Part shown: positions 4,201 through 35,110 of the stretch, piece by piece
Position numbering within the stretch: position 1 is the first letter of the stretch
Layout of the letters: every line of letters starts with the position of its first letter
Assembly (NCBI GenBank): GCA_051294905.1
Contig: CM119374.1
Coordinates: forward strand, 17,856,001-17,920,000
Source of the DNA: Botryllus schlosseri
Taxonomy: Eukaryota
Reading direction: 5' to 3'
Length of the DNA stretch: 64,000 nt
The notes under the pieces: generated by a model
Seen by the model: the letters and a program-made list of their open reading frames with translations, nothing else
Database searches by the model: none
Told to the model about the DNA's origin: nothing
Position numbers and translations under genes: made by a program

Positions 4201-7200
4201 TTTACACGACATGCAATCTTACACAATTGCTTCCAATGTTATCATTCCGTTTTCAGATTGCGGTAGGCATATCAACTGCAGTCACCAGCATTTCTGCGAT
4301 AACCATGATCGGGTATCCCGTTGAAGTATACCTGGTCGGTACAGCCTTCTATTGGGCGATGGGAGGTATACTTGCCGCCGTGGTGGTGTCATACATCTAT
4401 TACGTACCATTCTTCAACAACTTACAGCTGGACACAGTGTACACGGTAGGACTTTTACTGATTGCTAGGCATAGGAGTTGATTATGCGACCATTTTCTTT
4501 GACATCCAGAGGGGATAGAAAGGAAACATGGTTACATCATGCGACTTCGGGATCGCGAGAGAAAATGCCGGTGGGCTGCCGGTAGTGGTATACCACTTTC
4601 ACTGACGCAGTCAAACCTGCACTGTAATTGAGGCGCTTGTTGTGCTTTGAAACTATACGAACAGGCTTTGAAACCATGTCGCTTTTTTCAGTACCTCGGA
4701 CTGCGATATAGCGTTTTCACCCGAAGGATGGTAGCCGGGATGGTCGTGATTAATGAGGTTGGCATACATGCTAATTTCCTCTATACACGTGACGTTACAT
4801 CCCTTATGTTTCCATTGCAGATTTTCTACATGGGATCAATCATTTATATTCCATCATTGGCAATAAACGCTGTTACGCCTCTGCCGATAACAACTAGCAT
4901 CGCTCTCATCGGAGTAATATGCACGTTCTACACGACATTGGTAATGTCTTCTTACGACAAGGACGACGCAATATAACTAGAATGAATGAGTTATGAATTC
5001 AGATGTGATTAAAGTCTATCATCATCAGAGGTGGTGAAAGTATAGTCAGCGTTGCAATTCCAGTAGAAGCAAGAGTAACACGCCATAAATTTCTACTCAA
5101 TTGAAAGTAGAAGAGCGATTTGCAAATCATATCAAAACTACTCCACGTGGAAGTAGAAAGTGAAGGGACTTGAAACTACTGTAAGCACTTTAGTTTCAAC
5201 GAGTAGATTTGTTTTATGGGCTGCCTAAAGGGGGTGGGGTAAAGGGTTTGAGGTGAATGTAATGACCATCCTGTTGTGTTTCCAGCTCTAGGCTATAGGA
5301 GACTGCAAGCTCACTGCACCCGTATATGAGATGTGCTAAGTCTCGTAGTATTATTGTAGGTTTAAGTGATGTTTATCAAATCGTTGGTATTTTGGTCACA
5401 TGCTATAATTGGAAATAATTAAGCTACTAGAAAATCTTGTTACTAGATATTACGAATTCCACAACTGGGCGGGCGATAGTGCAAGTTAGGGTTGCATTTA
5501 AAACAAAAATCAATTTAAAACAAACATGTTTAAAAGAAGACCCTAATTTAAAACATGTTTTTTATTGTTTTTTTTTAGCCATGACGTCAGGATTATTCAA
5601 TTGTGACGTCATAGTGGATTGACATTGACAATTGAAAATATAGGGTGAATATAGCTCCTTTGACGAAATATCCGTACTGTTAATGTTGAACCGACTATTT
5701 TGAGGGTTCCAACCATCCCATATCGATATACGTTGGCTATATCGGGTGGTAATTGTCCGTAGGCTCATACAACATGTTTTTTGGAAAGTCTATACAAAAT
5801 TACGGCATAATTTGACAACTTAAAAAACAAAATTTTCTTTTTCAAAAACATCGTTTGTTCTAAATACAACCCTAGTGCGAGTGATAATATTAGGTTAGTG
5901 TATAATGAACTCCTTAAGTATGACAGAACTCAATTAAGAAGGTACCATAGAAGTTGAACTCCCGAATTGGGTGAAATTCAAGTCTCTTCAAGTTTTCAAA
6001 GTGTCAAAGTGAATTCCGAAAATGTTTTCCCAGTTTCCGACGTGCTGATCCGACTGAAGTCATTTCGTGTTTTATAGCCCTCTAGTTTACTGGACCTAAC
6101 ATATCGATATCGCCTTCCGACACATGCCACCTTTTTTGTCACCTGGCCTTTTATATTATCTTCTTCTACTTTTCATTCAGAGAGCATGTGCATGCCTCCT
6201 ATTTTACATCGCCTCGGTTCAGGTGGAGTTTTATTCCGAAGAATTCTCCAGGCCGTTTCGACACCTTCCTGTCTTTCATTGTATCGCAGTCTTGTGGTGT
6301 ATTGAAATGATGAAATTTTTAGCAATAGATTGAATTGAATTGAACCTACATGCCAAGTTTAGCCCGGGATATAGGAGTGGTAGAACTTGAGATTGAGAAC
6401 AATTTTGAAGCAATAAACTATTAACGGATTTAACATCGTAATTTCATATGTTGGCCCGTCTGACCATACCGCCTGTTGTCTCACATAGGGCGGTATGAAT
6501 GCTGTGGTGTGGACAGATGTCGTTCAATCTCTGCTCATGATAGCAGCGTCGCTCACTGTGTTCGTAATTGGGTCCAATTCGGTCGGGGGATTGGAAAGTC
6601 TCTCTGCGGCTGTAAAACGAGGAGAGCGTGACACCTTTTTCAAGTAAGGCGATTTACAGAGAGTCCTATGCATTATACTGGCTTGCAGCAAGACAATAAC
6701 TACTCCTACTTCTGTATAGATTCGGAGACTTCGATGTTTCATCGCGAAAACACCCCGTTGCGTTGGTGATAGGAGAGTTCTTCGTGTTCACGCAATACTT
6801 GGGCTTTACACAGGCGATCTACCAACGCCTTCTATCCTGCAGGAATGTCAGACAATCAAAAAAGTAAGTGTGTACGAACATCACGTCGAGTACCGTACCA
6901 AGCACCCCGAGACAACTTTCAAATTTTCATCAACACTTGAACCACTTGAACTTGAAAAAATAAACATGGATTCTAACATGGTAATGACATGAGTCGCTCC
7001 ATCTCATATCGACTCCACGAGAACGTCGACACGGATTCTGAATTTCATGTTCAGGCATGATAAGGCTTCTACATGTCTTGGAATCTGACAGTCACCCTAA
7101 ATGTCACAGTATTCCCGAATCAGACACTTATATATATATATATATATACATATATTTATATAGCAGATAGTTATATTTATAGAGCTTCCGATCAGACATG

Positions 7201-16616: not shown

Positions 16617-18874
16617 GCCATAAGACATGATAAATGACTTCACCTTTATTATAGGCCTATATAGGTAGGCTAATTCGCATATAGGCTACCAGGACTCAGC
16701 ATTCATTTTATCATCCAAGAAATACCCCAACGGAAGAAGAGTTAGAGGGAAATGTATAAAACTCAATTGTTGTCACCTCTAAACATAAATCATATAAAAT
16801 TATATGGTGGGATATATCTATTAAAAGTATGGAATAGTCGGCTTATCGACTGAAATCCTTGGATTTTCGTTCAAATAAAGGAGATGTATAGAGAAAGACT
16901 CGGTAGTCCAGAGAGCCCCTGGCGTCTTATTCTATGTTATGCAACATAGCCATGCGTTACGCACACCGTATAGTACAGTATACAACGTACAGTAACACCA
17001 TACTGTCATATATGACCAGTTGACCACGTAGGCCTACTTTGTGTGTTTTGTCCCAGTGGCGGCTCGTGACAATATCGGGTGGTGGGGCAAGGGCTGCGAG
17101 CGACTTTTATCAACATTTCGTCACAATGGCGTTTTCCAACGTAAAAAAGTAACTTTATGATGGTCACATGAATTTCCCGACAACAGTGATTTTAACGTAG
17201 GTGCCGCGAGAAGTTTGCCGGTGAGCCGTGACTTGAAGTGTGGTAACAAATGTTTTATTCATTTATTTTTAATCAAAGGATTATTTTACAAATTGTACGT
17301 GAACTAAGAATCGTCCCTATGCCACGAATCAAGTATCAGGTCATCCTTAGTAGCATGCGTTTTGATTTCATGGTAGAGTTATAGATTACGCAAATCGATA
17401 GACCCTAAAATCCGACCGTCACCCCAAATTCGAAATCCGGATCCAGTCCGGCCAGGTAAAAAAACATTGAAATCCTGCTCCTGCTCCTGAACCGGACTGT
17501 GGCCATCTCTGGTTACGACCAGGTGATAATAGGCAACCAAAGCGGAGGCACCCGGCGTACGATTGGATCGATAGACTGGACAACTTCTAGACCTCTCATT
17601 TTCGCTCTAAAGGCAACTGCGTAAACTACGTACGGAATAAAGATTAAATACGATTCATGTTCGCACTTGACTTGACCTGACTAATTCCAACGACTAGAAC
17701 TCGAGAGATTGCGTAAGCCTAACTGGAAAGGTCAACGAGTTCGGACACATACGCAATTGTTATCTCATAGATTGGGCCTGTCAATATGGGCTCGAAAGTC
17801 ACGTGACTTTTCAGCATAGCAACCACCGTCTGGGGCCAAGCGCGTTTCTGGTATCATCTTCTCTGCGACAGTAATGCATTTGTATGTCGCAATTTCTGCT
17901 ACTGCCCTGGTCTTTGCTGTCACATTTTGTGTTTGTGTTACAGGATTGATTTTTTTTTTCGTGCAGATAGATGACAATGTGTAGTATTCAATTAACATGA
18001 TGGAGTATAGAGCAGTTTAAGATAGCCTATGTCAAACAAGTAATTCCAAGGTTTAGTACTTTCATCTGGACCTACTAACTATTCATCGTATGGCTGCAGC
18101 ATTATTATGCTTCAAGTGTATACTTATCGACACCGAGACAGTGATCAGTCAACATCGGAGATTAGTAATATTGTAACATTACCGTACCGTGTTAAATTTG
18201 ATTTCAGATGGATTTGGTTAAGCTACTTTTACGATTTGCGAGTTCTTCAAAAATGATCCGAATCTGGTCAAAAGAAGTCAAAATGATTTAGACAACGACC
18301 ATCCAACATCAGCAATGTATGGTGGAGATGGCAGTGAATTGGGAAACAGTCAGTTCAGCCATGAGTATAATGAAAGTTTATGACGTGGAGGTTGGTAATT
18401 GCAAAATTACCTGAAAGATTGGGGAAGCGTTGGATTTGAGTTCGAATCCCACTTGACGCAAGTGGGTCGGAGCCTTATCTGGACTCCCCACTGCTTACCT
18501 AACTACATGAGCAGCGTCATGTAATCAAGCCCAGATGGCTAAGTAAAGCCAATGAGGCTCTAAAATCGGCATCACTGACGAGGACATATGAAAGCAAGCA
18601 AGAGAAGAAAGATGGTCAACGAATGGGTGACAGGAACTCAGAAAAAGCTTATCAAAAAGCAAAGAGACCCTTGAACTTGAAAGCATTTATTTTGTGGTGC
18701 AAACAGACGATCATCATCATCATTGGTTTATTACCAATTTTATCAGTTCGATACACCACAAAATGCGATACAATGAAAAGACAGGAAGATGTCGAAGCGA
18801 CTGGGAGTAGTATATGGAATCAGGACACTTATCTTGACCTAGGCGATGTAAAGAGGAGGCATGCACATGCACAC

Positions 18875-19542
18875 TAGGGCTTTTCAGAAATGACTTTTTT
18901 TCTCAAATCGTACTGGGACTACTGGCTACTTGATAAAATTGTTAGGGTTACTTAATTTAGGCCTACACACAAAATTTGGTTCAATTCCAGCCAGTAACCG
19001 CTTTGGTACAGAAGTAAGTTTCTATTTATTATTTTAAATAAATAATAAAAAATTCGAAAATTTTCTGTTCACCCCGTGAAAGTGTTAGGCTGTCTATAGA
19101 AACGATGCTCACCAAATTTGATTCAATCCCAACCAGCGGAAGCGGAATTATCGCCGTCGAAAAATTTGGATTTGAATAAAATAGTATTTACGGTGAGCAC
19201 AACTATAATAAATAAACAAAGAATCGGTCACCGTAAATACTATTTTATTCAAATCCAAACTTTTCGACGGCAATAACTCCGCTTCCACTAATTAGAATTG
19301 AACCAAATTTGGTGAGCATCGTTTCTATAGACAGCCTAACGCTTTTATGGGGTGAACAGAAAATTTTCAAAATTTTTATTATTTATTTTTCCATTATAAA
19401 TAGAAACTTTCTTCTCCTGTAGCAAAGCGGTTACTGGCTGGAATTGAACCAAATTTTGTGTGTAGGCTTTAATTAGGTAACCTAACAATTTTATCAAGTA
19501 GCCAGTACGATTTGAGAAAAAAGTCATTTTTGTAGAGCCCTA
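18875..19542. mobile_element. Almost fully palindromic hAT-type MITE (668 bp)
   Basis: Starts TAGGGC, ends GCCCTA; ~320-bp arms around a ~30-bp spacer near 19197-19227; perfect TSD ATGCACAC. Confidence 0.93.
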
Positions 19543-19791
19543 ATGCACACTGAATGAAAGTGAAGAAGATAGCATTTCCACCTTTTCAGAGTACTATGTA
19601 ATATTGCATACTTGCCGGAGTGTTATATTTTTTAAAGTAGTTTTAGGACATGTTTGCGGCACTTTTGTGATGTGTGTATTGATAGATATCAAGTGTCCCT
19701 ATTCTACCAAATCAAGATCATTAATAGACTTGAGCGTTTATGAAGAAAGTCTTCATTTTGAAATGAGTCGGTCATCGGTGATACTATAGTA

Positions 19792-20461
19792 CAGGGCCGG
19801 CCAACCCGTGGCCCGCGGGCCACATGTGGCCCGCGAGAAGGTTTTGAGTGGCCCGCGAAGTAATTTCCGAAATTTCTAATATCAAAAATGGATTGCATAG
19901 ATTGTGAAATTGCAAGGCAAACCAAAAATTTGATTAGTTTGGCCGCAACACTTGAGATGTGATGACTAGAATATCAGTTCCGACGCATTGACAGATCCAT
20001 CAGCCAGTCACATATTGGTATATCTTCGTACACTACAATAAAGCAGAATAATTTGCGATAGATTTATCAAAAGTAAAAATCTTCTGCAAGCTTAGCGCAA
20101 CATGTTGTCACTCGATTCCTTGTTTTTTAATATTGTTGCCCTTTTTGTGAAAATGGAAGAACGCCTGATGTATCAGATTGAGTCCAACTATATTCGCGAT
20201 TACGAGACAAAGTGTCGTTCAACATATGCGACCTGCGTTTGCGCTCGCAGTAAGATCGTTGGATATGGAACCTAGGGACGGAAAGGTTGACGCATGTTGG
20301 TCGCAGCTTTCGATACCGATATGTCCATGCGCCGAATAGCCCATTTCTCGCAAACTTAGCCCAGCGATATACGACAGGCTCGCAATATAGTCAAGTGACA
20401 ATATTATTGACCTATGAACAATCGAATGTGGCCCTTTGGCTGAAAAGGTTGGCCGGCCCTG
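19792..20461. mobile_element. hAT (Buster/Charlie-like) MITE, 670 bp
   Basis: TIR CAGGGCCGGCCAACC...GGTTGGCCGGCCCTG; perfect TSD CTATAGTA; GGCCCGCG subterminal motifs. Confidence 0.92.
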
Positions 20462-20869
20462 CTATAGTACTTGCCCAGCATCACAAGTACTTTGACAAGT
20501 GCAGGGCAGCTTGTGCACTGCATACTCAAAACTTATGCCATTTAATTGTTTTGGACCCGACGATTACCTCAAGATTCTGAATAGAAGAACTACCTAATTC
20601 TGATATTATAATATTTCCACAACAATACTTTCTTGATCTTGCATACTCTCGCTTGATTTTACAAAATTCTAAGAGTGCTGACGAAATCAATAACTGGCGA
20701 ATAAATTCGACAAATTCACAACTTGAGAATGTATTTCCTTTGTACCGAGAATGAAACAAATAGAATGTAGGTATTGGTCACAGATTAGGTATTCCTGATT
20801 AATGTTGCCAACTTACCATAGACGGATGCAATTTTGACTCAAGCTATACACTGCTACTGTGGAGGTAGT

Positions 20870-21560
20870 CTTAAACTGACGACTCACTTAAACACACAGA
20901 GTTGGCTTGAAAATGGGCAGCCATAAGCAATACAATTGATAGGACTGTGTTGGTATATTGAAATTGACGAGAATAACAGCAAGCAACATAACTGTGAGTA
21001 CTCCATGGGAATCTGTAGTTATTGCGTTTCTGCATCGCGTCGACGTAAGTATTTCCCATTGACAAGCCAAGATCCTGAACGGCGTTTGTGTAAATTTAGG
21101 GTGCTCTGGCCCTGAGAACGACGGTAAGGGATACCAGTGTTGTTGGGTCCGTATGGTTACGAGGCTGGTCTCACACAAATGACCTACTGGTGGCATTGGT
21201 GTACCATATGTCGACAACAATGTCAGTTCCTTCCCAGCGTTTTGGGTGGATTTCTTCCAAGTTCAGGAAGTATATGTGGTCCCGACTTTTAAGGCCGGAA
21301 GCGTCTCCAAGTGTTCGCTCCACCTCCCTACGGTGACGTCATTTTATAGACAGTTGAGCTGCATTTTCTCACCGTTCAAGGGGTAAATAGCGTGTGTGTG
21401 CTTCTCGTTCTTGCGATAAAGGAGATGGTGTCTTCTGGAGAGCAGTTTTTGGCAGAGATACCGATTGCATCATACAAAATGCCTGGATCAGAGATGCCCC
21501 GGATATGGTTTACATATAGCGCACAGTGCAACTTCACTAGCACAGCAATCAGGTACAGAT
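20870..21560 (-). pseudogene. Ty3/Gypsy integrase C-terminal remnant
   Basis: Frameshifted minus-strand reading RWSEHLETLPALKVGDHIYFLN...HPKRWEGTDIVVDI...LVTIRTQQH resembles the recalled Gypsy integrase tail (RWSEHT..L..L.VGD.V.IQN..P.RW..TG.VV..R.T.RNR). Boundaries approximate. Confidence 0.55.
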
Positions 21561-22019
21561 TAGTGAGACTAGCATCAATGTTTGCATTGATTTGTTAAAC
21601 ATCTGAAAGTAGGTATCTATAAAGAGAATAAAATGGTTATGAATTAGCCTACCCTCTGATTTTTGTTCAAGAAATTTGTGTAAATTTTGTATAGGGCAAT
21701 GCAAAAGCTACTGAAGGTAGAAAATTTTAAATTTGGCTAAACTAGCCCAATTTGTTATACATTTTTTTGAAAACTCAACCATTTCATGGCGTAGCCAGTA
21801 AAATTCTATAAAACTATTTTATTTTTTCAATAATTTTTTTTTTGAAGAATCTGATAACTTCACTTCTGCATGTTGGAATTGAGCCAAATCTAGTGTGCAA
21901 CCTTTCTTCGAGCCAACCTAACAATTTTGTTCATGAGACAGTGAAATTTGAAAAAAAAGTTGTTTTTGAACAACATTGATGTATAGAAACTTGATCAAAA
22001 TTTAAAAAAAAACATTGGC

Positions 22020-22690
22020 TACAGTGCCAGTACTAAATTATACGAAGTAGTGTCACGAGTAACAGCAAGACCTGGTCTTCCATTAAAAGAATCTTTACAT
22101 TCCAGAGTTAGAATGATACCAAATTTTAAATCACTGCATCATCACAAAAACCAAGTCGAAAGTACGGTACTCTTGTCCTTGTCCGGCAATAGCAGTCTTC
22201 TCAGCACTATCCTTGAAACAATCAATAACTTCCTTCTGATTGGCATGGTTCAACATAAATTTGGCTGACCGAAATTCTTGATTATCTTTTTCGATAAATG
22301 GCACAGATATCTTAATAGCTAACCGGTGCCTGCAGTTGATGCATCTATTCTTAGGACAATTTTACTATATAAACACTTTAATAAAAATCTAATAATTGTG
22401 GGTTATCTTAAATCATTTGCTATTGAAGCTGACTTGATTACGCTGTCTTGGGGCACACAAAATACCGGTGTGACATTTGATACCACCAAACAAACAAGTC
22501 AACATAGATCAAATGTTAATTATATTTATCATTCTATCTAGCCTTATTAATTTCAGTCACCTTCCTGTCGTTTTCTGGCAATTTAGAAGTCGATGGAAAG
22601 ACTATTCCGAATTGTTTTCTCATCCATTATAACAAATTGGCACGTTATACCCTGGCATTTTGCGCGGCTGCAAAACAACATAAACCTACC
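22020..22690 (-). pseudogene. THAP-domain transposase N-terminal remnant
   Basis: Minus-strand MPGYNVPICYNG*ENNSE*SFHRLLNC...*LKLIR resembles a decayed THAP zinc finger; position fits the transposase of the 17769-29343 element. Confidence 0.4.
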
Positions 22691-23104
22691 TAGTTGGTGT
22701 CTAAAAGTCCTGAAACTAGCTAATAAGTCATAGAAGATAACATAAAACCCAGAACTGTACTTCAAACAACCTCACTGAGACAGAAAATACGATTTGAAAA
22801 CAGACCAATAACGCAAATTAACCACTGTGATTCTAATAGAATTCTCGGGAATTATATATGTTCATGTGAAACACAAAAAATAGCAGGGGCATCATGGTAT
22901 TTTTCAGTTTATAATTTTTACCGGAATTCCAAAAACCACTTGCCAGATTTTACAATATTTATTTTGTGACAGGTTATCGGGATACCTGATCAAGAATGCG
23001 ACTCAATCAGTAAACACAGGTGCCCAACTGTAACACAGATTTGCAATAAAAATGGTTTGAAATAACTTAGGAATAGGAACAGACCAGAATCACAACCAGC
23101 TCAA

Positions 23105-25165
23105 TGAAATATCGCGTTGATCAATACATAGACACACTTGAATTTCCGACAAAATCGATACATATATAATTGAAGAATTACCCATGTTGGGACCCTAAAG
23201 AAAGATATTCAACCGCATCAGTGGACGTAAGTACCCCTAATAAAAAATTATTGACGATCATTAAGCTTCGGAATGACAAAGGAACAGAACAGAATCCGAA
23301 TGAATTCGGTGGAATATCACCTCGTTCAATACTTAGACACACTTGAATTACCGACAAAATCGATACATATATAATTGGAGAATTACCCATGTTGGGACCC
23401 TAGAGGAAGATATTCAACCGCATCAGTGGACGTAAGTACCCCTAATAAAGAATTACTGACGATCATTAAGCTTTGGAATGACAAAGGAACAGAACAGAAT
23501 TCGAATGAATTCGGTGGAATATCACCTCGTTCAATACATAAACACACTTGAAATCCCGACGAAATCGATACATATATAATTGAAGAATTACCCATGCTGG
23601 GACCCTAAAGGAAGATATTCAACCCCATCAGTGGACGTAAGTACCCCTAATGAAGAGTTATTGACAAACAATAAGCTTCGGAATAACTCAGGAACAGAAC
23701 AGAATCCAATCGAATTCGGTGGAATATCGCGTCGTTCAATTCAAAGATACACTTGAATTTCTGACAAAATCGGCACATATATAATTGAAGAATTACCCAT
23801 GCTGGGACCCTGAAGGAAGATATTCAACCCCATCAGTGGACGTAAGTACCCCTAATGAAGAGTTATTGACAAACAATAAGCTTCGGAATAACTCAGGAAC
23901 AGAACAGAATCCAATCGAATTCGTTGGAATATCGCGTCGTTCAATCCAAAGATACACTTGAATTTCTGACAAAATCGGCACATATATAATTGAAGAATTA
24001 CCCATGCTGGGACCCTAAAGGAAGATATTCAACCCCATCAGTGGACGTAAGTACCCCTAATAAAGAATTATTGACGATCATTAAGCTTCGGAATGACAAA
24101 GGAACAGAACAGAATTCGAATGAATTCGGTGGAATATCACCTCGTTCAATACTTAGACACACTTGAATTACCGACAAAATCGATACATATATAATTGGAG
24201 AATTACCCATGTTGGGACTCTAGAGGAAGATATTCAACCCCATCAGTGGACGTAAGTACCCCTAATGAAGAGTTATTGACAAACAATAAGCTTCGGAATA
24301 ACTCAGGAACAGAACAGAATCCAATCGAATTCGGTGGAATATCGCGTCGTTCAATCCAAAGATACACTTGAATTTCTGACAAAATCGGCACATATATAAT
24401 TGAAGAATTACCCATGCTGGGACCCTAAAGGAAGATATTCAACCCCATCAGTGGACGTAAGTACCCGTAATAAAGAATTATTGACGATCATTAAGCTTCG
24501 GAATGACAAAGGAACAGAACAGAATTCGAATGAATTCGGTGGAATATCACCTCGTTCAATACATAAACACACTTGAAATCCCGACGAAATCGATACATAT
24601 ATAATTGAAGAATTACCCATGCTGGGACTCTAAAGGAAGATATTCAACCCCATCAGGGGACGTAAGTACCCCTAATGAAGAGTTATTGACAAACAATAAG
24701 CTTCGGAATAACTCAGGAACAGAACAGAATCCAATCGAATTCGGTGGAATATCGCGTCGTTCAATCCAAAGATACACTTGAATTTCTGACAAAATCGGCA
24801 CATATATAATTGAAGAATTACCCATGCTGGGACCCTAAAGGAAGATATTCAACCCCATCAGTGGACGTAAGTACCCCTAATGAAGAGTTATTGACAAACA
24901 ATAAGCTTCGGAATAACTCAGGAACAGAACAGAATCCAATCGAATTCGGTGGAATATCGCGTCGTTTAATCCATAGATACACTTGAATTTCTGACAAAAT
25001 CGGCACATATATAATTAAAGAATTACCCATGTTGGGACCCTAAAGGACGATGTTCAACCCTATCAGTGGACGTAAGTACCCCTAATAAAGAATTATTGAC
25101 GATCATCAAGCTTCGGAATTACTCAGGAGCAGAACAGAATCCGATCGAATTCGGTGGAATATCCC
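23105..25165 (+). repeat. Tandem array of ~10 x 205-bp units (left arm)
   Basis: AATTACCCATG recurs every 205 bp (about 23177-25022); the ORF track repeats at 205-bp spacing. Confidence 0.97.
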
Positions 25166-25415
25166 GTTAGTCAATATAATAATACTTCAAGTTACTCCTA
25201 CACCGTGATATGTACAATTCATTTATGTTGTTGTACATGATAACTAACCAAATTGGCGCCGGCTTTGCATCGAACACAATTTCCTTTTTAAAACAGTTCC
25301 AAGAATATATAGTCTACTAGTTAGAGTATAGCGAAAAGTAACGATATAGCGTGTGAAATTGTGTTTTCAAATGTATAGGTGGAGGGGGGTATATTCAGTT
25401 TATTTTCGTCTACTC

Positions 25416-25784
25416 CAGTGGTTCCCAACGTGGGCGATTTGGCGGTCTAGGGGGGTGAAAATGACGAAGAGGGCGATAGGGGGGCGAAAATGGGAAAATG
25501 GACAAAGGGGGCGACAGGGCGAGAAAATAACGAAGGAGGAGATAGGGGTGCGATGACGCGTCAAAACGGATGACCTTTTTTTTCTTCATTTAGTCAACCC
25601 ACGGTAATTTCGTTACAAAAGTGTGTCAAATTAGACATCGAGCCGAAAATTTGACCTTTTTTTAGTCAACCCGCCGGTGATTACAGTTTGTATGCCCAAT
25701 TTTCGGTAAACAAAATTTGGGGGGCGATGATCGGTGTTGACCTTGAAAAGGGGGCGATGGGTCGAAAAAGGTTGGGAACCACTG
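25416..25784. mobile_element. hAT (Buster-like) MITE inside the foldback spacer
   Basis: TIR CAGTGGTTCCCAAC...GTTGGGAACCACTG; perfect TSD GTCTACTC. Confidence 0.93.
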
Positions 25785-26048
25785 GTCTACTCCTTCGGTA
25801 TAATTTACCAATGTAGATGAGCAGGCACCGTTGGTTGGATCACTAGACACCATTCTATCTAGGATTTCAGAAAACTTTGAAATATAGTCGCTCTTATGAT
25901 CAAGTATAGTGCGGCGCGGATGGACAACTACTCTGATATCTTGTCTTTTCAATTCGCTGGCCCTACTTCGGTCCAACTCTAAGGTCGGATTCTTGAAATG
26001 ACCGTGATCCTGTCGTAAAACCCCGATATTATTCATTTACTCACACGG

Positions 26049-26240
26049 CAGTGTTGGGATCAGGTCACTACCTTCGAGTCACGAGTCATCTCGAGTCATT
26101 GCACATTTTGACTCGAGTCAAATTAAGTCAATCGATTTTCGAAGGTGACTTTAGTCAAGTCAAGTCACTCATTTTTTGGAGGTGGCTTGAGTCGAATCAA
26201 GTCGAATCAAGTTAAGTCACGAGAAAAGTCGCAATTCAAC
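26049..26240. mobile_element. Fragment of a GACTCGAGTC-rich MITE family
   Basis: Starts CAGTGTTGGG; dense GAGTC/GACTC repeats as in other copies in the window. Right end not found. Confidence 0.6.
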
Positions 26241-26929
26241 TCAAATTGAATTTTCGAAGTATGAGTGATAATTCATAGTCATTAGCATCACTCGTTGCGT
26301 GAAAGACAGCTAGATTAATTGAATTAAATTTGATTGAATCAAACAACGAATATAAATTTAAATACCTGAGTAACCGTGTAGCTGAATGCTACAGTCTGGT
26401 AGTATCAGCAGATCTAGGCAGTGGTTCTCAACCTTTTTGTCTCCGCGGACCCCCTTGAACCTGTCACAGACCCCCGCGGACCCCCAAGTTTTAGATCGGA
26501 TTTAGCTCGATTATCGAGTAACCGTTATCTGCCTTGCCTGCAAATATCGACCTTATGCTATAGGGATCAAGCAACCAGAATGCTAACATTCCCAACGGAT
26601 TGTCTGATAGCATGCAAGGTTATAGTTGTTGAAGAGAGATTTCTAAAATATGAAATCTGAAGTTTTAAGCAGAACAATAACTACCAATGGCATGTATATC
26701 GCGCGAAGCGTTCAAAAAATTTCAGTTCAGTGCAGCTTTGCGCCCCACTTCAGATGCTTTCACCTATCCTAGTTTGAGAACCAAAACAGATGAATGTGGA
26801 GGATTGCAAATACTACGATATCACCGTACTCGAATTTGCACAGCCCTAGTGATATCATACTTTGACAGAGCGACGCGTTCTCTCTTAAATTCTGCTGATC
26901 ATGTGGTAATTGAACGAGAGGACGCGCGT

Positions 26930-28960
26930 ACGTTCTGTTCCTTTGTCATTCCGAAGCTTGATGATCGTAATTAATTTTTTATTAGGGGTACTTACGTCCA
27001 CTGATGGGGTTGAATATCTTCCTTTAGGGTCCCAAAAGGGGTAATTCTTTAATTATATATGTGCCGCTTTTGTCAGAAATTCAAGTGTATCTATGGATTG
27101 AACGACGCGATATTCCACCGAATTCGATTGGATTCTGTTCTGTTCCTGAGTTATTCCGAAGCTTAATGATCGTCGATAATTCTTTATTAGAGGTACTTAC
27201 GTCCACTGATGGGGTTGAACATCTTCCTTTAGGGTCCCAAAAGGGGTAATTCTTTAATTATATATGTGCCGCTTTTGTCAGAAATTCAAGTGTATCTATG
27301 GATTGAACGACGCGATATTCCACCGAATTCGATTGGATTCTGTTCTGTTCCTGAGTTATTCCGAAGCTTAGTGATCGTCAATAATTCTTTATTAGGGGTA
27401 CTTACGTCCACTGATGGGGTTGAATATCTTCATTTAGGGTCCCAGCATGGGTAATTCTTCAATTATATATGTATCGATTTCGTCGGAAATTCCAGTGTGT
27501 CTATGTATTAAACGAGGCGATATTCCACCGAATTCATTCGTATTCTGTTCTGTTCCTTTGTCATTCCGAAGCTTAATGATCGTCAATAATTCTTTATTAG
27601 GGGTACTTACGTCCACTGATGGGGTTGAATATCTTCCTTTAAAGTCCCAGCATGGGTAATTCTTCAATTATATATGTATCGATTTCGTCGGAAATTCCAG
27701 TGTGTCTATGTATTGAACGAGGCGATATTCCACCGAATTCATTCGGATTCTGTTCTGTTCCTTTGTCATTCCGTAGCTTAATGATCATCAATAATTCTTT
27801 ATGAGGGGTACTTACGTCCACTGATGGGGTTGAATATCTTCCTTTAGGGTCCCAGCATGGGTAATTCTTCAATTATGTATGTATCGATTTCGTCGGAAAT
27901 TCAAGTGTGTCTATGTATTGAACGAGGCGATATTCCACCGAATTCATTCGGATTCTGTTCTGTTCCTTTGTCATTCCGAAGCTTAATGATCGTCAATAAT
28001 TCATTATGAGGGGTACTTACGTCCACTGATGGGGTTGAATATCTTCCTTTAAAGTCCCAGCATGGGTAATTCTTCAATTATATATGTATCGATTTCGTCG
28101 GAAATTCCAGTGTGTCTATGTATTGAACGAGGCGATATTCCACCGAATTCATTCGGATTCTGTTCTGTTCCTTTGTCATTCCGTAGCTTAATGATCATCA
28201 ATAATTCTTTATGAGGGGTACTTACGTCCACTGATGGGGTTGAATATCTTCCTTTAGGGTCCCAACATGGGTAATTCTTTAATTATATATGTGCCGATTT
28301 TGTCAGAAATTCAAGTGTATCTATGGATTGAACGACGCGATATTCCACCGAATTCGATTGGATTCTGTTCTGTTCCTGAGTTATTCCGAAGCTCATTGTT
28401 TGTCGATATTTCTTTCATAAGGTCACTTACGTCCACTGATGGGGCTGAATATCTTCCTTTAGGGTCCCAACATGAGTAATTCTTTAATTATATATGTGCC
28501 GATTTTGTCAGAAATTCAAGTGTATCTATGGATTGAACGACGCGATATTCCATCGAATTCGATTGGATTCTGTTCTGTTCCTGAGTTATTCCGAAGCTTA
28601 TTGTTTGTCAATATTTCTTTCATAAGGTCACTTACGTCCACTGATGCGGTTGAATATCTTCCTTTAGGGTCCCAACATGGGTAATTCTTTAATTATATAT
28701 GTGCCGATTTTGTCAGAAATTCAAGTGTATCTATGGATTGAACGACGCGATATTCCGCCGAATTCGATTGGATTCTGTTCTGTTCCTGAGTTATTCCGAA
28801 GCTTATTGTTTGTCAATATTTCTTTTATAAGGTCACTTACGTCCACTGATGGGGTTGAATATCTTCCTTTAGGGTCCCAACATGGGTAATTCTTTAATTA
28901 TATATGTGTCGATTTTGTCGAAAATACAATTATATCTATATATTGAACAACGTGATATTT
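26930..28960 (-). repeat. Tandem array of ~10 x 205-bp units (right arm, inverted)
   Basis: CATGGGTAATT-type motif recurs every 205 bp (about 27036-28881); reverse complement of the left-arm unit. Confidence 0.97.
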
Positions 28961-30024
28961 CATCGTATTGGTGGTGATTCCGGTCTGTTCGTATTCCTGA
29001 GATATTTCAAACCATTTTTATTGTAAATTTGTTTTATAGTTGGGTACCTGTGTCTACCGATTCAGTCGCATTCTTGATCAGATATCCCTTTAACCTGTCA
29101 CAAAAAGCTATTGTAAAATCTGGCAAGTGGTTTTTGGAATTCTGGTAAAAATTCCTAACTGAAAAATATCATGATGTCCGCGCTGTTTTTTGTGCTTTAC
29201 CTGAACATATATAATTCCCGAGAATTCTATTAGAATCACAGTGGTGCAAATTAACACAGGGAGCGCCTATCTAATATAGTTGTTTGGCCCCAGCGAACCA
29301 CAAGTCACGTGACTTTCGAGCCCAAATTGAATCCAGAACATCAATTTGAATGGTCTTTGAAGAACTAAGGACAGCAGCCTCGGAACTTCGGTCTCGGAAC
29401 AACGTAGGACATTTTGGCCTTGAAACTGGAGACTGTGACACAACACATACGGCTTACTGTCTATAAGTCTGCTGCGAAATCGCCGTTGGAAAATATATTA
29501 ATATATAAATACATGAATAAAAGCCGTAACTTAGTATACTGTTACAAGAAATCATCGACAAGTAGCATACGCAATCTCATAACCCATTCCGGTATGGTAC
29601 ACTGTCAAAATCAATGCAAACAGACGAACACCGAACTTTAAGTAAAATAGATCGAGGAATAGGCTGATCGAATGATCAGCTGTTAGCCGACATCGAAAAT
29701 GAAATAGCTATCGCAATTGACAGGGGATTGTAAGCAAATGGTTTGAAGGCCACAATTTCACAGTGAAATGGACATTGGCGAACATAAAATTATGCGAATA
29801 CTTGAATGCAAACCGAGAATCTTGGTTAGCTGTTTCATGCGATCATCGAGATATACCATTGGAAATATCATCACCGATCTCGTTATGGAACGCAGACTAT
29901 AGATTAGCACAGACCGACACCGGCTTTTGCGTGAGATCCGCAATGACGTAGGTAGGCTAAGTATCAGATCAGCGCGCATCTCTACCATACTCGACCTCGA
30001 AAACGAAATAACTGCCTCAATCAT

Positions 30025-30197
30025 TGAGTGTCAACTTTAAGACTTGGCACCGCGTTCGATACTAAAATCAAGACATACCGTGTGAAAGCTCATGACAGAT
30101 CTAGGTATGGAACATCGTTAAAATCAATAGAGATCAATAACGGCTTTTGCGTAAATTTGTTGGCGATAAATGAAGAGTCAGCTCTTACTCGACTTTG
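30025..30197 (+). repeat. 173-bp direct duplication, copy 1 (copy 2 at 33481-33653)
   Basis: Identical to 33481-33653 except one T/C difference (AGAGATCAAT vs AGAGACCAAT). Confidence 0.97.
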
Positions 30198-30283
30198 TTT
30201 TTACCAGCATTGTGCTCATACTCAATTTGGTCTAGTTGACTCTTTGGCTATCACCACTCAAAATTTATTATCCTGAACAAGCA

Positions 30284-31865
30284 ATGGCTGGCACTGCACG
30301 CGCTCCGAATTTCAGCATAGCTGAAAAAAATGGATTTATCGACTTGATTGGAAAATACCCCGTTTTGATTACCAGCAAAACTAGTGGACAGAGCGATAAG
30401 GATTTTAGAAGGAATAAAGAAGCGGCCTGGCGCAAACTTGTCAGTGAATTCAATTCATCAGGAATTGCACAAGTGGAGAGAAATGAGGACAAGTTGAAAA
30501 AACTCTGGAAAAATTTGAAGAGCGATTGTAAAAAGCATGAGGCGCAACGAGTACGGGAGCAAAGAAAAACTGGTGGTGGAATACCTGACCTTCAACCAAC
30601 TGCATCAGACATGATCTATGCCAAGATCAAAAGTAGGTGCTGCAGTAATCCATCATTCCTTGTGTAGACTACATAATAATTCAGGATTGTTTTTCACAGG
30701 TTTGATACCAAGTCAAATAAGTAGCATCCCCAGTCAATTTGATGATGATTCAATATCAGTACAAGTGCAACAAGAGTCATATGCAGGCTGCGAAACACAA
30801 ATGGAGGCGCCATCTTTCAGCACCACAGAAAATGTAGCAGGCATAGAACTGCCATGCTCTGAAATAGGTCTATATATATCTGTATATACACTTGAATGGT
30901 GATAACATGATCTAATACGATTTATCTTTAGGTTCTTCTGAAACTTCTATGGTCGAACTTTTTTCCGTTCCGACACTGAACCGTAAGTATACAATACAAT
31001 TTCTATTCACTGCTTGAGAATTTACTGGATATTTTCTGATAGATCCTAGTTCACCTGATCTGTCAACGTCTGGGGTTGCAGTTGGAACTTCAACTTCAAC
31101 TTCTACTTGCTCCGTCATGAACAATCCACTACCAAATCAAGGTAAATTCGCATTCATTTCTGATTTAACCATTGTCTATTTCTGGGATGGCCGGACATTT
31201 GTGCGGCCGTCGACACGTAATTCAATTAGTATGTGCTTGCGGCCGTCAACATGCAAATTGAATTTCGGAATTGAGAGATTTTAATTATTCTTGAAATTTT
31301 CAATTCGGCTTCATTTTTCAACTACAATATAGTAATTGAATTATGCAATCTGATCCCCAGAATATAGTAGCCTACAGATGCGAGCAGCAGAGGAAAATAA
31401 TTCAGAATAGATTCACTTGAATTTTTCCAAATAAGCATCAGGGATCTTGACCACTATAATTATGAAAACCCGCTTTACTTGCCAAAGCATGATAAAATCA
31501 CTTTTCGCAGACCAGGAACGGACTTGAAAAGTGCTGGTCTACGGACCAGAGGTTGCCGCCCCTGCTATCAACTGCGGAATTTTGGACATATTGCAGCAAT
31601 ATAAATATCAACATTTTTTTTAAACTCATGGTATTTATCATTTTCATCTTTCCAAACAGCTCGCTCTAAGCCTAAGGCCACCTATGAAGAAATGAGGTTG
31701 GATGTACTAAACGCTAAATTGGAGGAGAGCAAGGCTAAAAAAAGACTCCTGGAAAAGGATTTGGAAATGAGAGTTACGGAGACGAGAATGAGACAAATTG
31801 AGCATGATCTCAAAGTGAATCATTATAAAAAAAAGTCCGAGATGCTGGACAAAAAGTATCAGTGA
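30284..31865 (+). CDS. Harbinger Myb/SANT-like DNA-binding protein, 5 exons, ~290 aa
   Basis: Exons 30284-30632, 30700-30867, 30932-30982, 31043-31141, 31660-31865 (873 nt, open, GT-AG). Motifs RAPNFSIAEK, KEAAWRKL, KLKKLWKNLK, KTGGG and a C-terminal coiled coil. Confidence 0.88.
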
Positions 31866-32191
31866 ATTTTTGCTCACTGAATCCAGTGTCTGAACCAATT
31901 TTCTGTATACTTCGTTCAATTTCGTTGACACGCCATTCTTTTCTTGCCGAGGTTTTCCACACTGCTCATGCTATCCTGTATTGCAATTTATAAAATTGCT
32001 TCCACCGTTTTTCTACACCGCTTAAGCGCTTATGCTATCCTGCTATACTGTTTTATGCTATCCTGCTATACTGTGTTAAACTTACTATCAGCCGCTATGC
32101 GAATTTTCATTTTTACATGACACACGCAATAAAGCTCATGTTTGTTTCTTTGTAATTGAAATGGAATGTGTAGAAAAAGAATATTCATGGA

Positions 32192-33253
32192 TTAGTTTGA
32201 AAAGTGTCTCAAAATTATGCTTTGTCGCTCGGATTGTCCAGAAGGAGTCGATGCGACATGAGGGTGGTCTGAAGCATCTGGTTCGAATACGTCATCAACT
32301 TCCGTTTCATCAGTCATCTGTCGTGTCCGAATTGCCAGATTATGAAGGCAGGTTATGGCCACAACGATATTCGTGGAATTGCTGAGCTTGGTCCTCATCG
32401 GTATAGCTAAGGCGAAAAATCTTTTTTTCAGCATGCCAAAGCACTGCTCTATGCGAGAGCGGGTTACAATATGAGCGTGATTATACTTTTTTTCGGCCGA
32501 TGTTCTTGGTGATAATAGTGGTGTAAGTAAGTAGCTCCTCAGTGGATATCCATTATCCCCAAGCAAATATCCATCGATTTGATTATCTTCGAATCGATCA
32601 CGGATCACCGAATTGTCAAAGATTCTTGAATCGTGACAAGATCCATACCAACGTGTGACAATGTTTGTTACGACTCGCTGTGCATCACATATCATTTGAA
32701 CGTTCAATGAAAAATAACCTTTTCTGTTCCGGAACACCTCTGCATTATCACCGCCAGGGGATATTATGGGTAGATGAGTACAATCGATTGCTCCAACAAC
32801 GTTTGGGAAGCCTGCAATGTCATAAAATTCTTGCTTTACTTTGGTGAGGTCAGTAGGAAAATTCAAAAACAGGAGCTTCTTGCGGCATATGGCACGGGTA
32901 ATTTTGTGAATGCTTCTGTGAGCAGTTACTTTGCTTATACCAGCTAGGTCACCATCAGTCTGTTGAAAATGGCCATCCGCGAAAAACCGTAAGGCGCAAG
33001 TTAGTTGTAGTATTGGCGGAAGAGCATGATCTCTGCAGGTCAATTCTTCATCATCTTTCAACAGCCCAAAAAGATAGTGAGTTGCGTCTTTTGAAAACCG
33101 GAATCGCAGTCTGAACTCGTTGTTCGAATACCTTTCGAAGGGGTTCTGAACATCTGCGAGATACTTTCTTGGCAGTCTGTACTGTTCATCATCATCGTCA
33201 GTAAATTCCAACAACTCCAGCAATTCCATAATCCTCCACTGATCTCCTTTCAT
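32192..33253 (-). CDS. HARBI1-like Harbinger transposase (DDE_Tnp_4), 353 aa, intact
   Basis: GAIDCTH, NRKGYFSLNVQ, GSCHDSRIF, YLLGDNGY and RSRIEQCFGMLK motifs give a complete D-D-E triad. Confidence 0.95.
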   Translation of the reverse strand: MKGDQWRIMELLELLEFTDDDDEQYRLPRKYLADVQNPFERYSNNEFRLRFRFSKDATHYLFGLLKDDEELTCRDHALPPILQLTCALRFFADGHFQQTDGDLAGISKVTAHRSIHKITRAICRKKLLFLNFPTDLTKVKQEFYDIAGFPNVVGAIDCTHLPIISPGGDNAEVFRNRKGYFSLNVQMICDAQRVVTNIVTRWYGSCHDSRIFDNSVIRDRFEDNQIDGYLLGDNGYPLRSYLLTPLLSPRTSAEKKYNHAHIVTRSRIEQCFGMLKKRFFALAIPMRTKLSNSTNIVVAITCLHNLAIRTRQMTDETEVDDVFEPDASDHPHVASTPSGQSERQSIILRHFSN

Positions 33254-33480
33254 TCATCCACGAGCAACTCAAAACAATAACAATCTGGCCTCGGTTCCGT
33301 GTTGAACTCGCTACAGCGACGAAGTAGACAGTAATTACTCGCAACTAACGGACTTGGCCGAGCGCGGCGCCAAATTGACATTTGAAACCGAATTAAGACC
33401 GCCGTCGCCTGGCGTCTCGGCCAAGTCATTCACTGGCCTTAAGCCAGGTCTAAATTAAGACAACTTTTTGAAACCCACCC

Positions 33481-33653
33481 TGAGTGTCAACTTTAAGACT
33501 TGGCACCGCGTTCGATACTAAAATCAAGACATACCGTGTGAAAGCTCATGACAGATCTAGGTATGGAACATCGTTAAAATCAATAGAGACCAATAACGGC
33601 TTTTGCGTAAATTTGTTGGCGATAAATGAAGAGTCAGCTCTTACTCGACTTTG
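33481..33653 (+). repeat. 173-bp direct duplication, copy 2
   Basis: Begins with TGA immediately after the Harbinger right end. Confidence 0.97.
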
Positions 33654-35110
33654 GAAACGAAATTACCACCCACATAGTTCAGTGACAAACTTAAAACTTG
33701 TTACATCGGTCGATACTAACACTTACCGTGCCAAATGTCATGACCGATCTCGGTATAGAACATCGTCAAAATCAATGGAGACCAATACCGGCTTTTGAGT
33801 AAAATCCGTTTGCTGTACTATGTACATGATAGATCAGCACACACTGAACTTCGGAAACGGAATTACTACCATTATCTTTAAGTAGCAAGCCTGAAACTTG
33901 GAGCAGTGTTAAATACTACCTTCACGACATATCATACCAAGTTTCAAGAATTATCATGGTGCGAAACACCGTCAAAATCGACCTATACCAGCAAAGGTCG
34001 ACTCAACGCATATTACGGTAACCGAGTTCAGATATAGATACGATTGTTACATCACACCTTAGGGGCGAGTAGGCATATTTGCCCCGGTTGCTCGGCCATT
34101 TTACGAATAGGAGAGAGTAAATCACCGTTTCTATATTGTGCGCGGCTTTGAGAGAATAGATAGTGAAAGCTTGTTATGAGCGCTACCGGGGCAAGCCCCG
34201 GCTAGGCATTCACAAAGCGAAAACACAGAAGAGAATTCGATTTTCGCAGAGACTTCGCTATGTATGGGCGTTTGCAAGCGAAAGCACAAGAACGCGGGTT
34301 TCGCTGTGATCTCGGTATATATTGATTGCTGTGCGTCTATAAATGGTTAAATTGTTATTGAACAGAATTTTAGGTGGGGCAATGCCCCAGTTGCCCTATA
34401 GGACGAGCCGCCACTGTTTTGTCCTATATAATAACGTGTGCAACTGTGCATGTGCAATTGTGCATTCATAAATACCTCATGGGACCACCCATTTCGCTAT
34501 CATACTGAATCTTAATTCTACAAATGCATAATTCCCGAGTAAAACCGTCGTTGAAGAAGTATTGTGTATAATATACGTTAACCTGTCAGGAAAGAACTTA
34601 CGCGAGGCCGGTAAGAAGAAACTTGCAAATGTATTAAATTCATAATTCCTAAGAACTACAATAAATGTCTGACCCCAAAGCTTGGTTCGCCTCGCAGCAT
34701 ACAGTTCCCCTGTAGCAATTTCAGGAAGAACAGAAATTAGAATAAAATGGAGCATTAGAAAAAAATCATCTAGCTGTCCTATTCTGGTAGGATGATCGTC
34801 TTGGCGACTGTTCGAAAAAGATAGTATCCTTTTCAAACCGGAAAATGGGCCACGGCCCAACAAAGGTCGGGAACCCCTGTCGTACGCTGACTAACTTGAC
34901 CTATCCAGCAAATATAACGCAGGCTTGGACGAGCACGTGATTTATTAAAAATCGTCACAACAGTCCACGCGGCGGACCGTGACGATTACGACCGGAAAAC
35001 TGTCGCGTTAGTTCCGTTGTTAATGTTTCGGGTAAACTCGTCATGTCGACGCAGAAAGTGATGTCTTCACCAGCACTACAGTAGCAGGCCGGCACACAGA
35101 CCATGTGTCG

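What the first reader, a model, noticed from the sequence alone, without database searches (positions are those of the whole stretch)
30025..33653. One-ended Harbinger flanked by a 173-bp target duplication
Seen: the structure is A-X-[Harbinger without left TIR]-X-Y, where X (173 bp, one mismatch) starts with the TGA abutting the intact right TIR, and A-X-Y reads as continuous host repeat. Established: Harbinger TSDs are 3 bp. Inference: a recent aberrant event in which the right end joined by transposase and the left was resolved by repair, or excision repair switched template from an empty allele into the element.
Basis: partly seen in the sequence, partly recalled or inferred. Interest (0 to 1): 0.7.

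Follow-up and report, generated by a model that had tools for sequence, protein, structure and literature searches.

The report
Left-truncated Harbinger with 173-bp flank duplication
A young Harbinger jumping gene has lost its left 1.4 kb and is bracketed by a near-perfect 173-base copy of the neighbouring DNA, most likely a scar of break repair after a failed excision; it is real but a one-off of a known kind.

Summary
Window 30025-30197 and 33481-33653 are a 173-bp direct repeat with one mismatch, and they bracket a PIF/Harbinger copy at 30198-33480. That copy keeps its right inverted repeat, abutting TGA, and lacks its left end. At least ten other genomic copies run 1,414 bp further left to a matching inverted repeat, mostly with 3-bp duplications, so the copy is truncated. 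The aberrant joint has 3 nt of microhomology (TTG, 30195-30197).

The "host repeat" is a 2.36-kb hAT-like non-autonomous transposon with at least 330 near-identical copies. All 16 paralogs inspected read A-X-Y with a single X identical to the right X. Its own 8-bp duplication matches on both sides, so both halves belong to one insertion.

Both junctions are unique in the assembly. I found no progenitor junction, no reciprocal fragment and no donor copy.

Best reading (about 0.55): a normal insertion, then an excision-type break. The left end copied 170 bp from an empty template and was joined by microhomology to an incompletely restored element. Half-transposition, or tandem duplication followed by excision, cannot be excluded.

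Reads gave only contigs, so the joint is not independently confirmed. An earlier scan note on this same stretch gave the enclosing host transposon's bounds; the scan has no such note on other DNA.

The parts
17046..17053 (.). Left 8-bp target-site duplication (TTTTGTCC) of the enclosing hAT-like host transposon
   Evidence: the same 8-mer flanks 17054 and 34416. Three paralogs also have matching 8-bp TSDs.
29323..30024 (+). 'A': host-transposon sequence left of the duplicated block. The first part of the host element is 17054-17787, separated by an 11.5-kb nested insertion.
   Evidence: paralogs align 17054-17787 + 29323-30197 + 33481-34416 at 98-99.5%; the A|X joint is identical to empty paralogs, with no footprint.
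30025..30197 (+). Left copy of X (173 bp). It carries the only difference, a private T at 30134.
   Evidence: the T variant otherwise occurs only in two old (95%) subfamily copies that differ at 6 more X positions. The C variant has 330 exact 36-mer matches.
30195..30197 (+). TTG microhomology at the aberrant joint; it fits both the end of X and element positions 1412-1414
   Evidence: flank comparison. (alignment to a full copy starts at 1412). (full copies match the query from 30195). (contigs of full copies fit from 30195).
30198..33480 (+). PIF/Harbinger copy lacking its left 1,414 bp; equals positions 1415-4701 of the 4.7-kb subfamily
   Evidence: 99.6-99.8% identical to the full copies L002 and L003.
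30284..31865 (+). Myb/SANT-like accessory gene (several exons). Exon 1 starts 88 bp from the aberrant joint.
   Evidence: Myb_DNA-bind_5, E 7e-13, on 30284-30634. The exon structure beyond exon 1 is inferred, not tested.
32192..33253 (-). Transposase ORF, 353 aa, uninterrupted
   Evidence: DDE_Tnp_4, E 1.5e-30, full profile; one private residue against other copies.
33467..33480 (+). Right terminal inverted repeat core (14 nt, perfect against the left TIR of full copies)
33481..33653 (+). Right copy of X. It begins with the TGA target triplet and is identical to X of all 16 young paralogs examined.
33654..34416 (+). 'Y': rest of the host transposon up to its right TIR (...ACGAGCCGCCACTG)
34417..34424 (.). 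Right 8-bp target-site duplication (TTTTGTCC) of the host transposon

Best explanation
A 4.7-kb Harbinger first inserted normally at a TGA inside a copy of an abundant 2.36-kb hAT-like transposon, giving A-TGA-element-TGA-rest of X-Y. Later a double-strand break arose at the element, most simply by transposase cutting during an attempted excision or a cut at the left end only.

The left chromosomal end (A-TGA) then primed repair synthesis on a template without the element. That template could be one of the >=330 near-identical host-transposon copies, the homologue, or the element's own right flank. It copied about 170 nt of X.

The right side either kept, or re-copied from the sister chromatid, the element from its right end back to position about 1412.

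Synthesis aborted, and the two 3' ends were annealed at a 3-nt microhomology (TTG/CAA), filled in and ligated. This is aborted synthesis-dependent strand annealing finished by microhomology-mediated end joining.

The product is A-X-[element 1415-4701]-X-Y. With one terminal repeat it can no longer be excised, yet it keeps an intact transposase ORF.

Shown here: the anatomy, the truncation, the microhomology, the availability of empty templates, and the family's habit of microhomology-joined deletions. Inferred: the order of events, the nature of the break and which template was used.
For: - Truncation is real: ten other family copies at distinct loci extend 1,414 bp further, to a left TIR with 3-bp TSDs in 8 of 10 complete copies.
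- The right end is a normal transposase joint (TIR|TGA), as at the other copies, whose flanks read TTA/TAA/TGA/ATA.
- The A|X and X|Y joints are identical to empty paralogs, with no footprint. This fits templated copying from an empty site.
- The joint X|1415 has TTG microhomology.
- Empty templates are plentiful: 330 exact matches to a 36-mer of X, with paralogs at 98-99.5%.
- The host transposon's 8-bp TSD matches on both sides, so both halves are one insertion.
- The family shows 9 internal-deletion junctions, 8 of them with 2-10 nt microhomology. That is the signature of abortive gap repair.
- The left X carries the only, private, substitution. This is compatible with error-prone repair synthesis but is not diagnostic.
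- Literature: aborted HR followed by end joining after P-element excision (PMC3330096); gap filling with a bias to nearby templates and microhomology in animal TIR elements (PMC8277862); abortive gap repair in PIF/Harbinger (PMC2213677).
Against: - No progenitor allele (A-TGA-left TIR) exists in this assembly, so the prior normal insertion is inferred.
- A 3-nt microhomology arises by chance at roughly 5% of random joints (my calculation), so it is weak support on its own.
- No other truncated copy examined shows a flank duplication, so this is a single event without replication.
- The joint was not confirmed by spanning reads.
- The sequence alone cannot separate this model from half-transposition, or from tandem duplication plus excision.
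Confidence: 0.55

Rival explanations
1. Half-transposition. Only the right end was joined by transposase to the top strand at TGA. The element was broken at about 1414, and that end was joined by end joining to a second target-strand break 173 nt away. Filling in the long stagger produced a 173-bp 'target duplication'.
For: The right TIR|TGA joint is canonical. The other joint is a non-TIR microhomology joint. No progenitor junction exists in the assembly. A single event explains everything.
Against: No left fragment ending at about 1411-1414 exists anywhere in the assembly. Single-end events are not documented in vivo for PIF/Harbinger (my knowledge; one search found none). It needs a coincident second nick and a coincident break inside the element.
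Confidence: 0.12
2. Tandem duplication followed by excision. After a normal insertion, a 3,456-bp tandem duplication of [element 1415-4701 + X] arose by microhomology-mediated joining between sister chromatids. The upstream full-length element then excised precisely and left the truncated copy behind.
For: It gives exactly the observed sequence, including a clean A|X joint if excision is precise. The family is recently active: copies 99.6-99.8% identical sit at different loci with TSDs. Structures of full element, short flank piece and fractured element are known for maize Ac/fAc (PMC4270019).
Against: It needs one more independent event than the best explanation. No intermediate is seen, since both junctions are unique and no second copy lies nearby.
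Confidence: 0.12
3. Ectopic origin. The fragment [element 1415-4701 + X] came from a Harbinger insertion in another host-transposon copy. It entered this empty copy either by gene conversion after a break at the X|Y boundary, or as a circular DNA that recombined through X.
For: There are >=330 near-identical host copies, so homology for such exchanges is ample. A circle closed at TTG and integrated through X gives exactly X-element-X.
Against: No other locus in the assembly has the Harbinger right end joined to X, nor the hypothetical left junction. The donor would have to be lost, or on the unassembled haplotype.
Confidence: 0.06
4. Assembly artefact: the X|1415 joint comes from a chimeric read or a misjoin among repeats.
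For: Both partners are repeated. No spanning read was seen, because only contigs were available and none of the 32 listed pieces bridges the joint.
Against: Overlap assemblers do not join sequences that share 3 nt. The whole 3.5-kb unit lies within long-read length in a chromosome-scale contig. The likely source run holds 9 of 11 sampled words of the 160-bp joint query, against 7 of 11 in every other run of the species. The copy has its own private substitutions.
Confidence: 0.07

Closest known systems
Abortive gap repair / aborted SDSA products of cut-and-paste transposons (Ds from Ac; internally deleted P elements; PIF/Harbinger deletion derivatives, PMC2213677; P{wa} 'aborted HR', PMC3330096)
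   Same: Both show a transposase-type break, short repair-synthesis tracts and a final joint at a few nucleotides of microhomology. The same family here has 8 such internal joints.
   Different: The usual products keep both ends and lose the middle. Here one end copied an element-free template, so the left terminus is replaced by a 170-bp copy of the flank.
Gap filling that creates Pack-TIRs in animals (PMC8277862)
   Same: Filler DNA is copied from a nearby or homologous template into a broken TIR element, with microhomology at the breakpoints and a bias to nearby templates.
   Different: In Pack-TIRs the filler lies between two retained TIRs. Here the filler replaces one terminus, so the product is immobile rather than a new mobile chimera.
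Fractured Ac (fAc) and composite insertions at maize p1 (PMC4270019, PMC3744419)
   Same: Both involve a terminally deleted element next to duplicated flanking DNA, with breakpoints joined by 4-9-bp microhomology.
   Different: The maize cases come from alternative transposition using the ends of two elements, and involve kilobases to megabases. Here there is a single element, 173 bp, and no second element end nearby.
One-ended transposition of bacterial Tn3-family elements (from memory, not checked here)
   Same: One precise inverted-repeat end and one variable end.
   Different: The bacterial process is replicative, and as I recall its products carry the normal short target duplication. The enzyme family and the host domain also differ.

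Membership tests
PIF/Harbinger superfamily (the element) | DDE transposase of the DDE_Tnp_4 type | tested here: met
   PF13359, E 1.5e-30, profile 1-158 of 158, in the 353-aa ORF 32192-33253 (-).
PIF/Harbinger superfamily (the element) | Second gene encoding a Myb/SANT-like DNA-binding protein | tested here: met
   PF13873, E 7e-13, on 30284-30634 (+).
PIF/Harbinger superfamily (the element) | 3-bp target-site duplication (TNA/TWA type) | tested here: met
   For the family, 8 of 10 complete copies have identical 3-bp flanks: TTA x4, TGA x2, TAA and ATA. For this copy only the right-hand TGA is present, and the flanking repeat is 173 bp.
PIF/Harbinger superfamily (the element) | Terminal inverted repeats at both ends | tested here: not met
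   The family has a 14-nt perfect TIR. This copy has the right TIR only, because the left 1,414 bp are absent. It is a fragment of a member, not a complete element.
Abortive gap-repair / SDSA-plus-end-joining product | Microhomology at the novel joint | tested here: met
   TTG, 3 nt. The chance expectation is about 5%.
Abortive gap-repair / SDSA-plus-end-joining product | Identifiable template for the copied (filler) DNA | tested here: met
   X is identical, bar one private base, to the adjacent right flank and to 16 of 16 young paralogs. There are 330 exact 36-mer matches genome-wide.
Abortive gap-repair / SDSA-plus-end-joining product | A progenitor allele with the complete element at the same site | tested here: inconclusive
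   It is absent from this assembly.
hAT-like non-autonomous transposon (the host 'repeat') | 8-bp target-site duplication and short TIRs | tested here: met
   the TIR is CAGTGGCGGCTCGT... with its reverse complement at the other end. Matching 8-bp TSDs occur in the window copy and in 3 paralogs.
hAT-like non-autonomous transposon (the host 'repeat') | hAT transposase in an autonomous partner | not tested
   I did not look for an autonomous partner.

The most novel reading that the evidence does not exclude
The structure records a true half-transposition by a eukaryotic PIF/Harbinger transposase. In this reading a single-end strand transfer of the right terminus into the target was completed by host repair at a second nick 173 nt away. 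That would be a natural eukaryotic counterpart of bacterial one-ended transposition and would produce a long, L1-like target duplication.
Probability: 0.1. Interest if true: 0.6.

Novelty: new member of a known kind. Interest (0 to 1): 0.3.

Why it matters
This is a clean natural example, resolved to the base, of how break repair at a cut-and-paste transposon can swap a terminus for a templated copy of flanking DNA.

The result is an element that can no longer excise but still encodes an intact transposase and a Myb-like partner. That is a natural 'wings-clipped' helper, which could keep mobilising the many deletion derivatives and related short elements in this genome.

It also shows that a transposon nested in a highly repeated host element has hundreds of ectopic 'empty-site' templates available for repair. 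It remains a single locus, and the underlying repair pathways are well described.

Tried and rejected
- **Spanning reads.** The one reads call returned only Logan contigs. None of the 32 listed pieces, out of about 45,000, bridges 30197/30198, so this says nothing either way. The word search gave weak support only.
- **Ectopic donor for the left X through its private T.** The two other T-bearing copies belong to an old 95% subfamily and differ at 6 more X positions, so they are not donors.
- **Exchange between two different host-transposon loci.** Rejected, because the host element's 8-bp TSD matches on both sides.
- **'Full copies start at 30198'.** Rejected.
- **Recurrence of the structure.** Ten truncated or diverged copies were checked, and only the window copy has a flank-to-flank repeat.
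- **Reciprocal left fragment ending near 1414.** None found.
- **Progenitor or second occurrence of either junction.** None found.
- **Exact-protein look-up of the transposase, to find an alternate haplotype or other assemblies.** Nothing on record.
- **Not attempted:** expression of the truncated copy, an autonomous partner of the host element, and naming the organism.

Full report
**Observation.** The region was read directly and scanned for repeats.
- Window 30025-30197 and 33481-33653 form a 173-nt direct repeat, spaced 3,456 bp apart. The single difference is 30134 T against 33590 C.
- The surrounding DNA is a loose array of ~200-bp units that are only 64-85% alike. A 99.4% pair is therefore a recent duplication and not array background.
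- There are no N runs in 29700-34100.

**The element.**
- The - strand ORF 32192-33253 (353 aa, uninterrupted) matches DDE_Tnp_4 over the whole profile (E 1.5e-30).
- The + strand stretch 30284-30634 matches Myb_DNA-bind_5 (E 7e-13). This is the two-gene layout of PIF/Harbinger.
- A search of the window's own genome with 30198-33480 found many copies.
- In ten other copies at distinct loci the sequence left of the point equivalent to 30198 is conserved element DNA, not flank.
- In the complete copies it runs 1,414 bp further, to a left terminus GGGTGGGTTTCAAA. That terminus is the inverse of the right terminus over 14 nt.
- Eight of ten complete copies have identical 3-bp flanks: TTA four times, TGA twice, TAA and ATA.
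- The longest version of the family is 5,035 bp. The window copy, L002 and L003 belong to a 4.7-kb subfamily with a 333-bp internal deletion.
- The window copy equals positions 1415-4701 of that subfamily at 99.6-99.8% identity, with about five private changes.
- Its transposase ORF differs from the others by one residue.
- The missing 1.4 kb holds no long ORF. It carries the left terminus and, presumably, the upstream region of the Myb-like gene, whose start codon lies 88 bp from the joint.

**The joint.** The host reads ...GACTTTG followed by GAAACG. The element reads ...GTATTG followed by TTTTTACC. The three bases TTG (30195-30197) therefore fit both. This is seen in three ways:
- by flank comparison;
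- in the alignment to a full copy, which starts at 1412;
- in genome matches of full copies, which start at 30195, and likewise Logan contigs of full copies in two runs.

By my calculation a 3-nt overlap is expected at about 5% of random joints, so it is suggestive only.

**The 'host repeat' is a transposon.**
- A+X and X+Y each hit 40 of 40 scored places at 99-100%, out of more than 2,000 first-look candidates.
- Paralogs align as window 17054-17787 + 29323-30197 + 33481-34416. That is a 2.36-kb element with termini CAGTGGCGGCTCGT... and 8-bp target duplications, which makes it hAT-like and non-autonomous.
- The window copy has TTTTGTCC on both sides (17046-17053 and 34417-34424). Its left and right halves therefore come from one insertion, which rules out an exchange between two different host-element loci.
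- An earlier first-reader note on this window gave the outer bounds 17054-34416. I used it as a lead and verified it.
- In 16 of 16 paralogs A, X and Y are contiguous, with one X identical to the right X. The A|X and X|Y joints in the window are identical to these empty sites, without a footprint.
- A 36-mer of X with C has 330 exact genomic matches. With T it has three.
- The two other T copies belong to an old 95% subfamily and differ from the left X at six further positions. The T is therefore private to the left X, and no donor can be named.

**Uniqueness.**
- The X|1415 joint and the right-terminus|X joint each occur once in the assembly.
- A 30-nt pattern for the expected normal left junction (A-TGA-left terminus) is absent at up to 2 mismatches.
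- No copy of the left part ends near 1411-1414.
- Of ten truncated or diverged copies examined, only the window copy has a flank-to-flank repeat.

**Reads.**
- A 160-bp query centred on the joint had 11 sampled words. One run, probably the assembly's sample, holds 9 of them. All other runs of the species hold 7. This is what is expected if only that run carries some locus-specific words.
- The single reads call was given 5,121 letters and returned Logan contigs only. Of about 45,000 pieces, 32 are listed, and none bridges the joint. That is no evidence of absence.
- The joint is therefore supported by the assembly and weakly by the word counts, but not by spanning reads.
- A misjoin is unlikely on general grounds. 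The two sides share 3 nt, and the unit is far shorter than a long read.

**Mechanism.** The most economical account has three steps.
- A normal insertion took place at the TGA.
- A break of the excision type followed.
- Two-ended repair then used different templates at the two ends.

In detail:
- The top-strand 3' end of A-TGA invades an element-free copy and is extended by about 170 nt.
- The bottom-strand 3' end on the X-Y side holds, or re-copies from the sister chromatid, the element from 4701 back to about 1412.
- The two nascent 3' ends (...TTG and ...CAA) anneal and are filled in.

The polarity works, and each step is documented elsewhere:
- repair after P-element excision often aborts and is finished by end joining (PMC3330096);
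- animal TIR elements acquire filler DNA from nearby templates, with microhomology at the breakpoints (PMC8277862);
- PIF/Harbinger families diversify by abortive gap repair (PMC2213677).

Within this family, 8 of 9 internal-deletion joints carry 2-10 nt of microhomology, so such repair acts on it routinely. The hundreds of near-identical host copies make invasion of an empty template easy. The private substitution in the left X would fit error-prone repair synthesis, but one base proves nothing.

**Rivals.**
- Half-transposition explains the canonical right joint and the absence of a progenitor. It needs two coincident extra breaks and has left no donor remnant.
- Tandem duplication of [element 1415-4701 + X], followed by precise excision of the full copy, gives the same sequence with one more event. 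It resembles the maize Ac/fAc structures (PMC4270019).
- An ectopic donor, or a circle integrating through X, is possible, but no donor locus exists in the assembly.
- An assembly artefact is not excluded without reads.
- The present sequence cannot separate the first three rivals. Population genotypes could.

**Comparison and verdict.**
- The element is a fragment of a bona fide PIF/Harbinger family member. As a copy it fails the two-termini and 3-bp-duplication criteria, because of the rearrangement.
- The rearrangement belongs to the known class of transposon break-repair products: abortive gap repair, gap filling and fractured elements.
- Its particular form, a terminus replaced by a templated copy of the flank, is uncommon but not new in principle.
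- It is real, recent and neatly interpretable, but it is a single locus.
- One consequence worth noting is that the copy is fixed in place with an intact transposase ORF.

Noticed in passing
window 17054-17787 + 29323-30024 + 33481-34416 (with TSDs at 17046-17053 and 34417-34424): The 'host repeat' is a 2.36-kb hAT-like non-autonomous transposon with TIR CAGTGGCGGCTCGT and an 8-bp TSD. It has an internal array of ~200-bp units. At least 330 copies share an exact 36-mer, most at 98-99.5% identity, so it is a very young and abundant family. An older subfamily at ~95% also exists (L067, L069).
   Followed up: partly
window 17788-29322: An 11.5-kb block is inserted in the same host transposon between positions equivalent to 17787 and 29323. 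I did not analyse its other contents.
   Followed up: no
L004/L013 (G000:C16:13637687-13642721) and the other family loci L005-L011, L018: The Harbinger family has a 5,035-bp longest form and many internal-deletion derivatives. Nine deletion joints were seen, eight of them with 2-10 nt microhomology. Several derivatives share the same joints (544/863 and 1767/3003), so deleted forms have themselves transposed.
   Followed up: partly
genome-wide, e.g. G000:C13:17313165-17313598 and G000:C6:17870690-17871273: There are dozens of copies of a sister family. It shares the first ~587 bp at 92-93%, the last ~433 bp at 82-85%, and internal parts at 65-73%. These are probably related elements that could be cross-mobilised.
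   Followed up: no
window 31193-31400: A ~200-bp stretch inside the Harbinger, apparently within an intron of the Myb-like gene, is itself a dispersed short repeat. It has many genomic matches at 71-89%, and contig depth here is about 50 times that of the rest of the element. It is present in all family copies, so it is an old nested or captured short element.
   Followed up: partly
G000:C3:210014-213488 and G000:C6:27759114-27763630 (L008/L027, L011/L026): Two family copies do not show a clean 3-bp TSD. One has TGA against TCA. The other has flanks that share TGAA.
   Followed up: no
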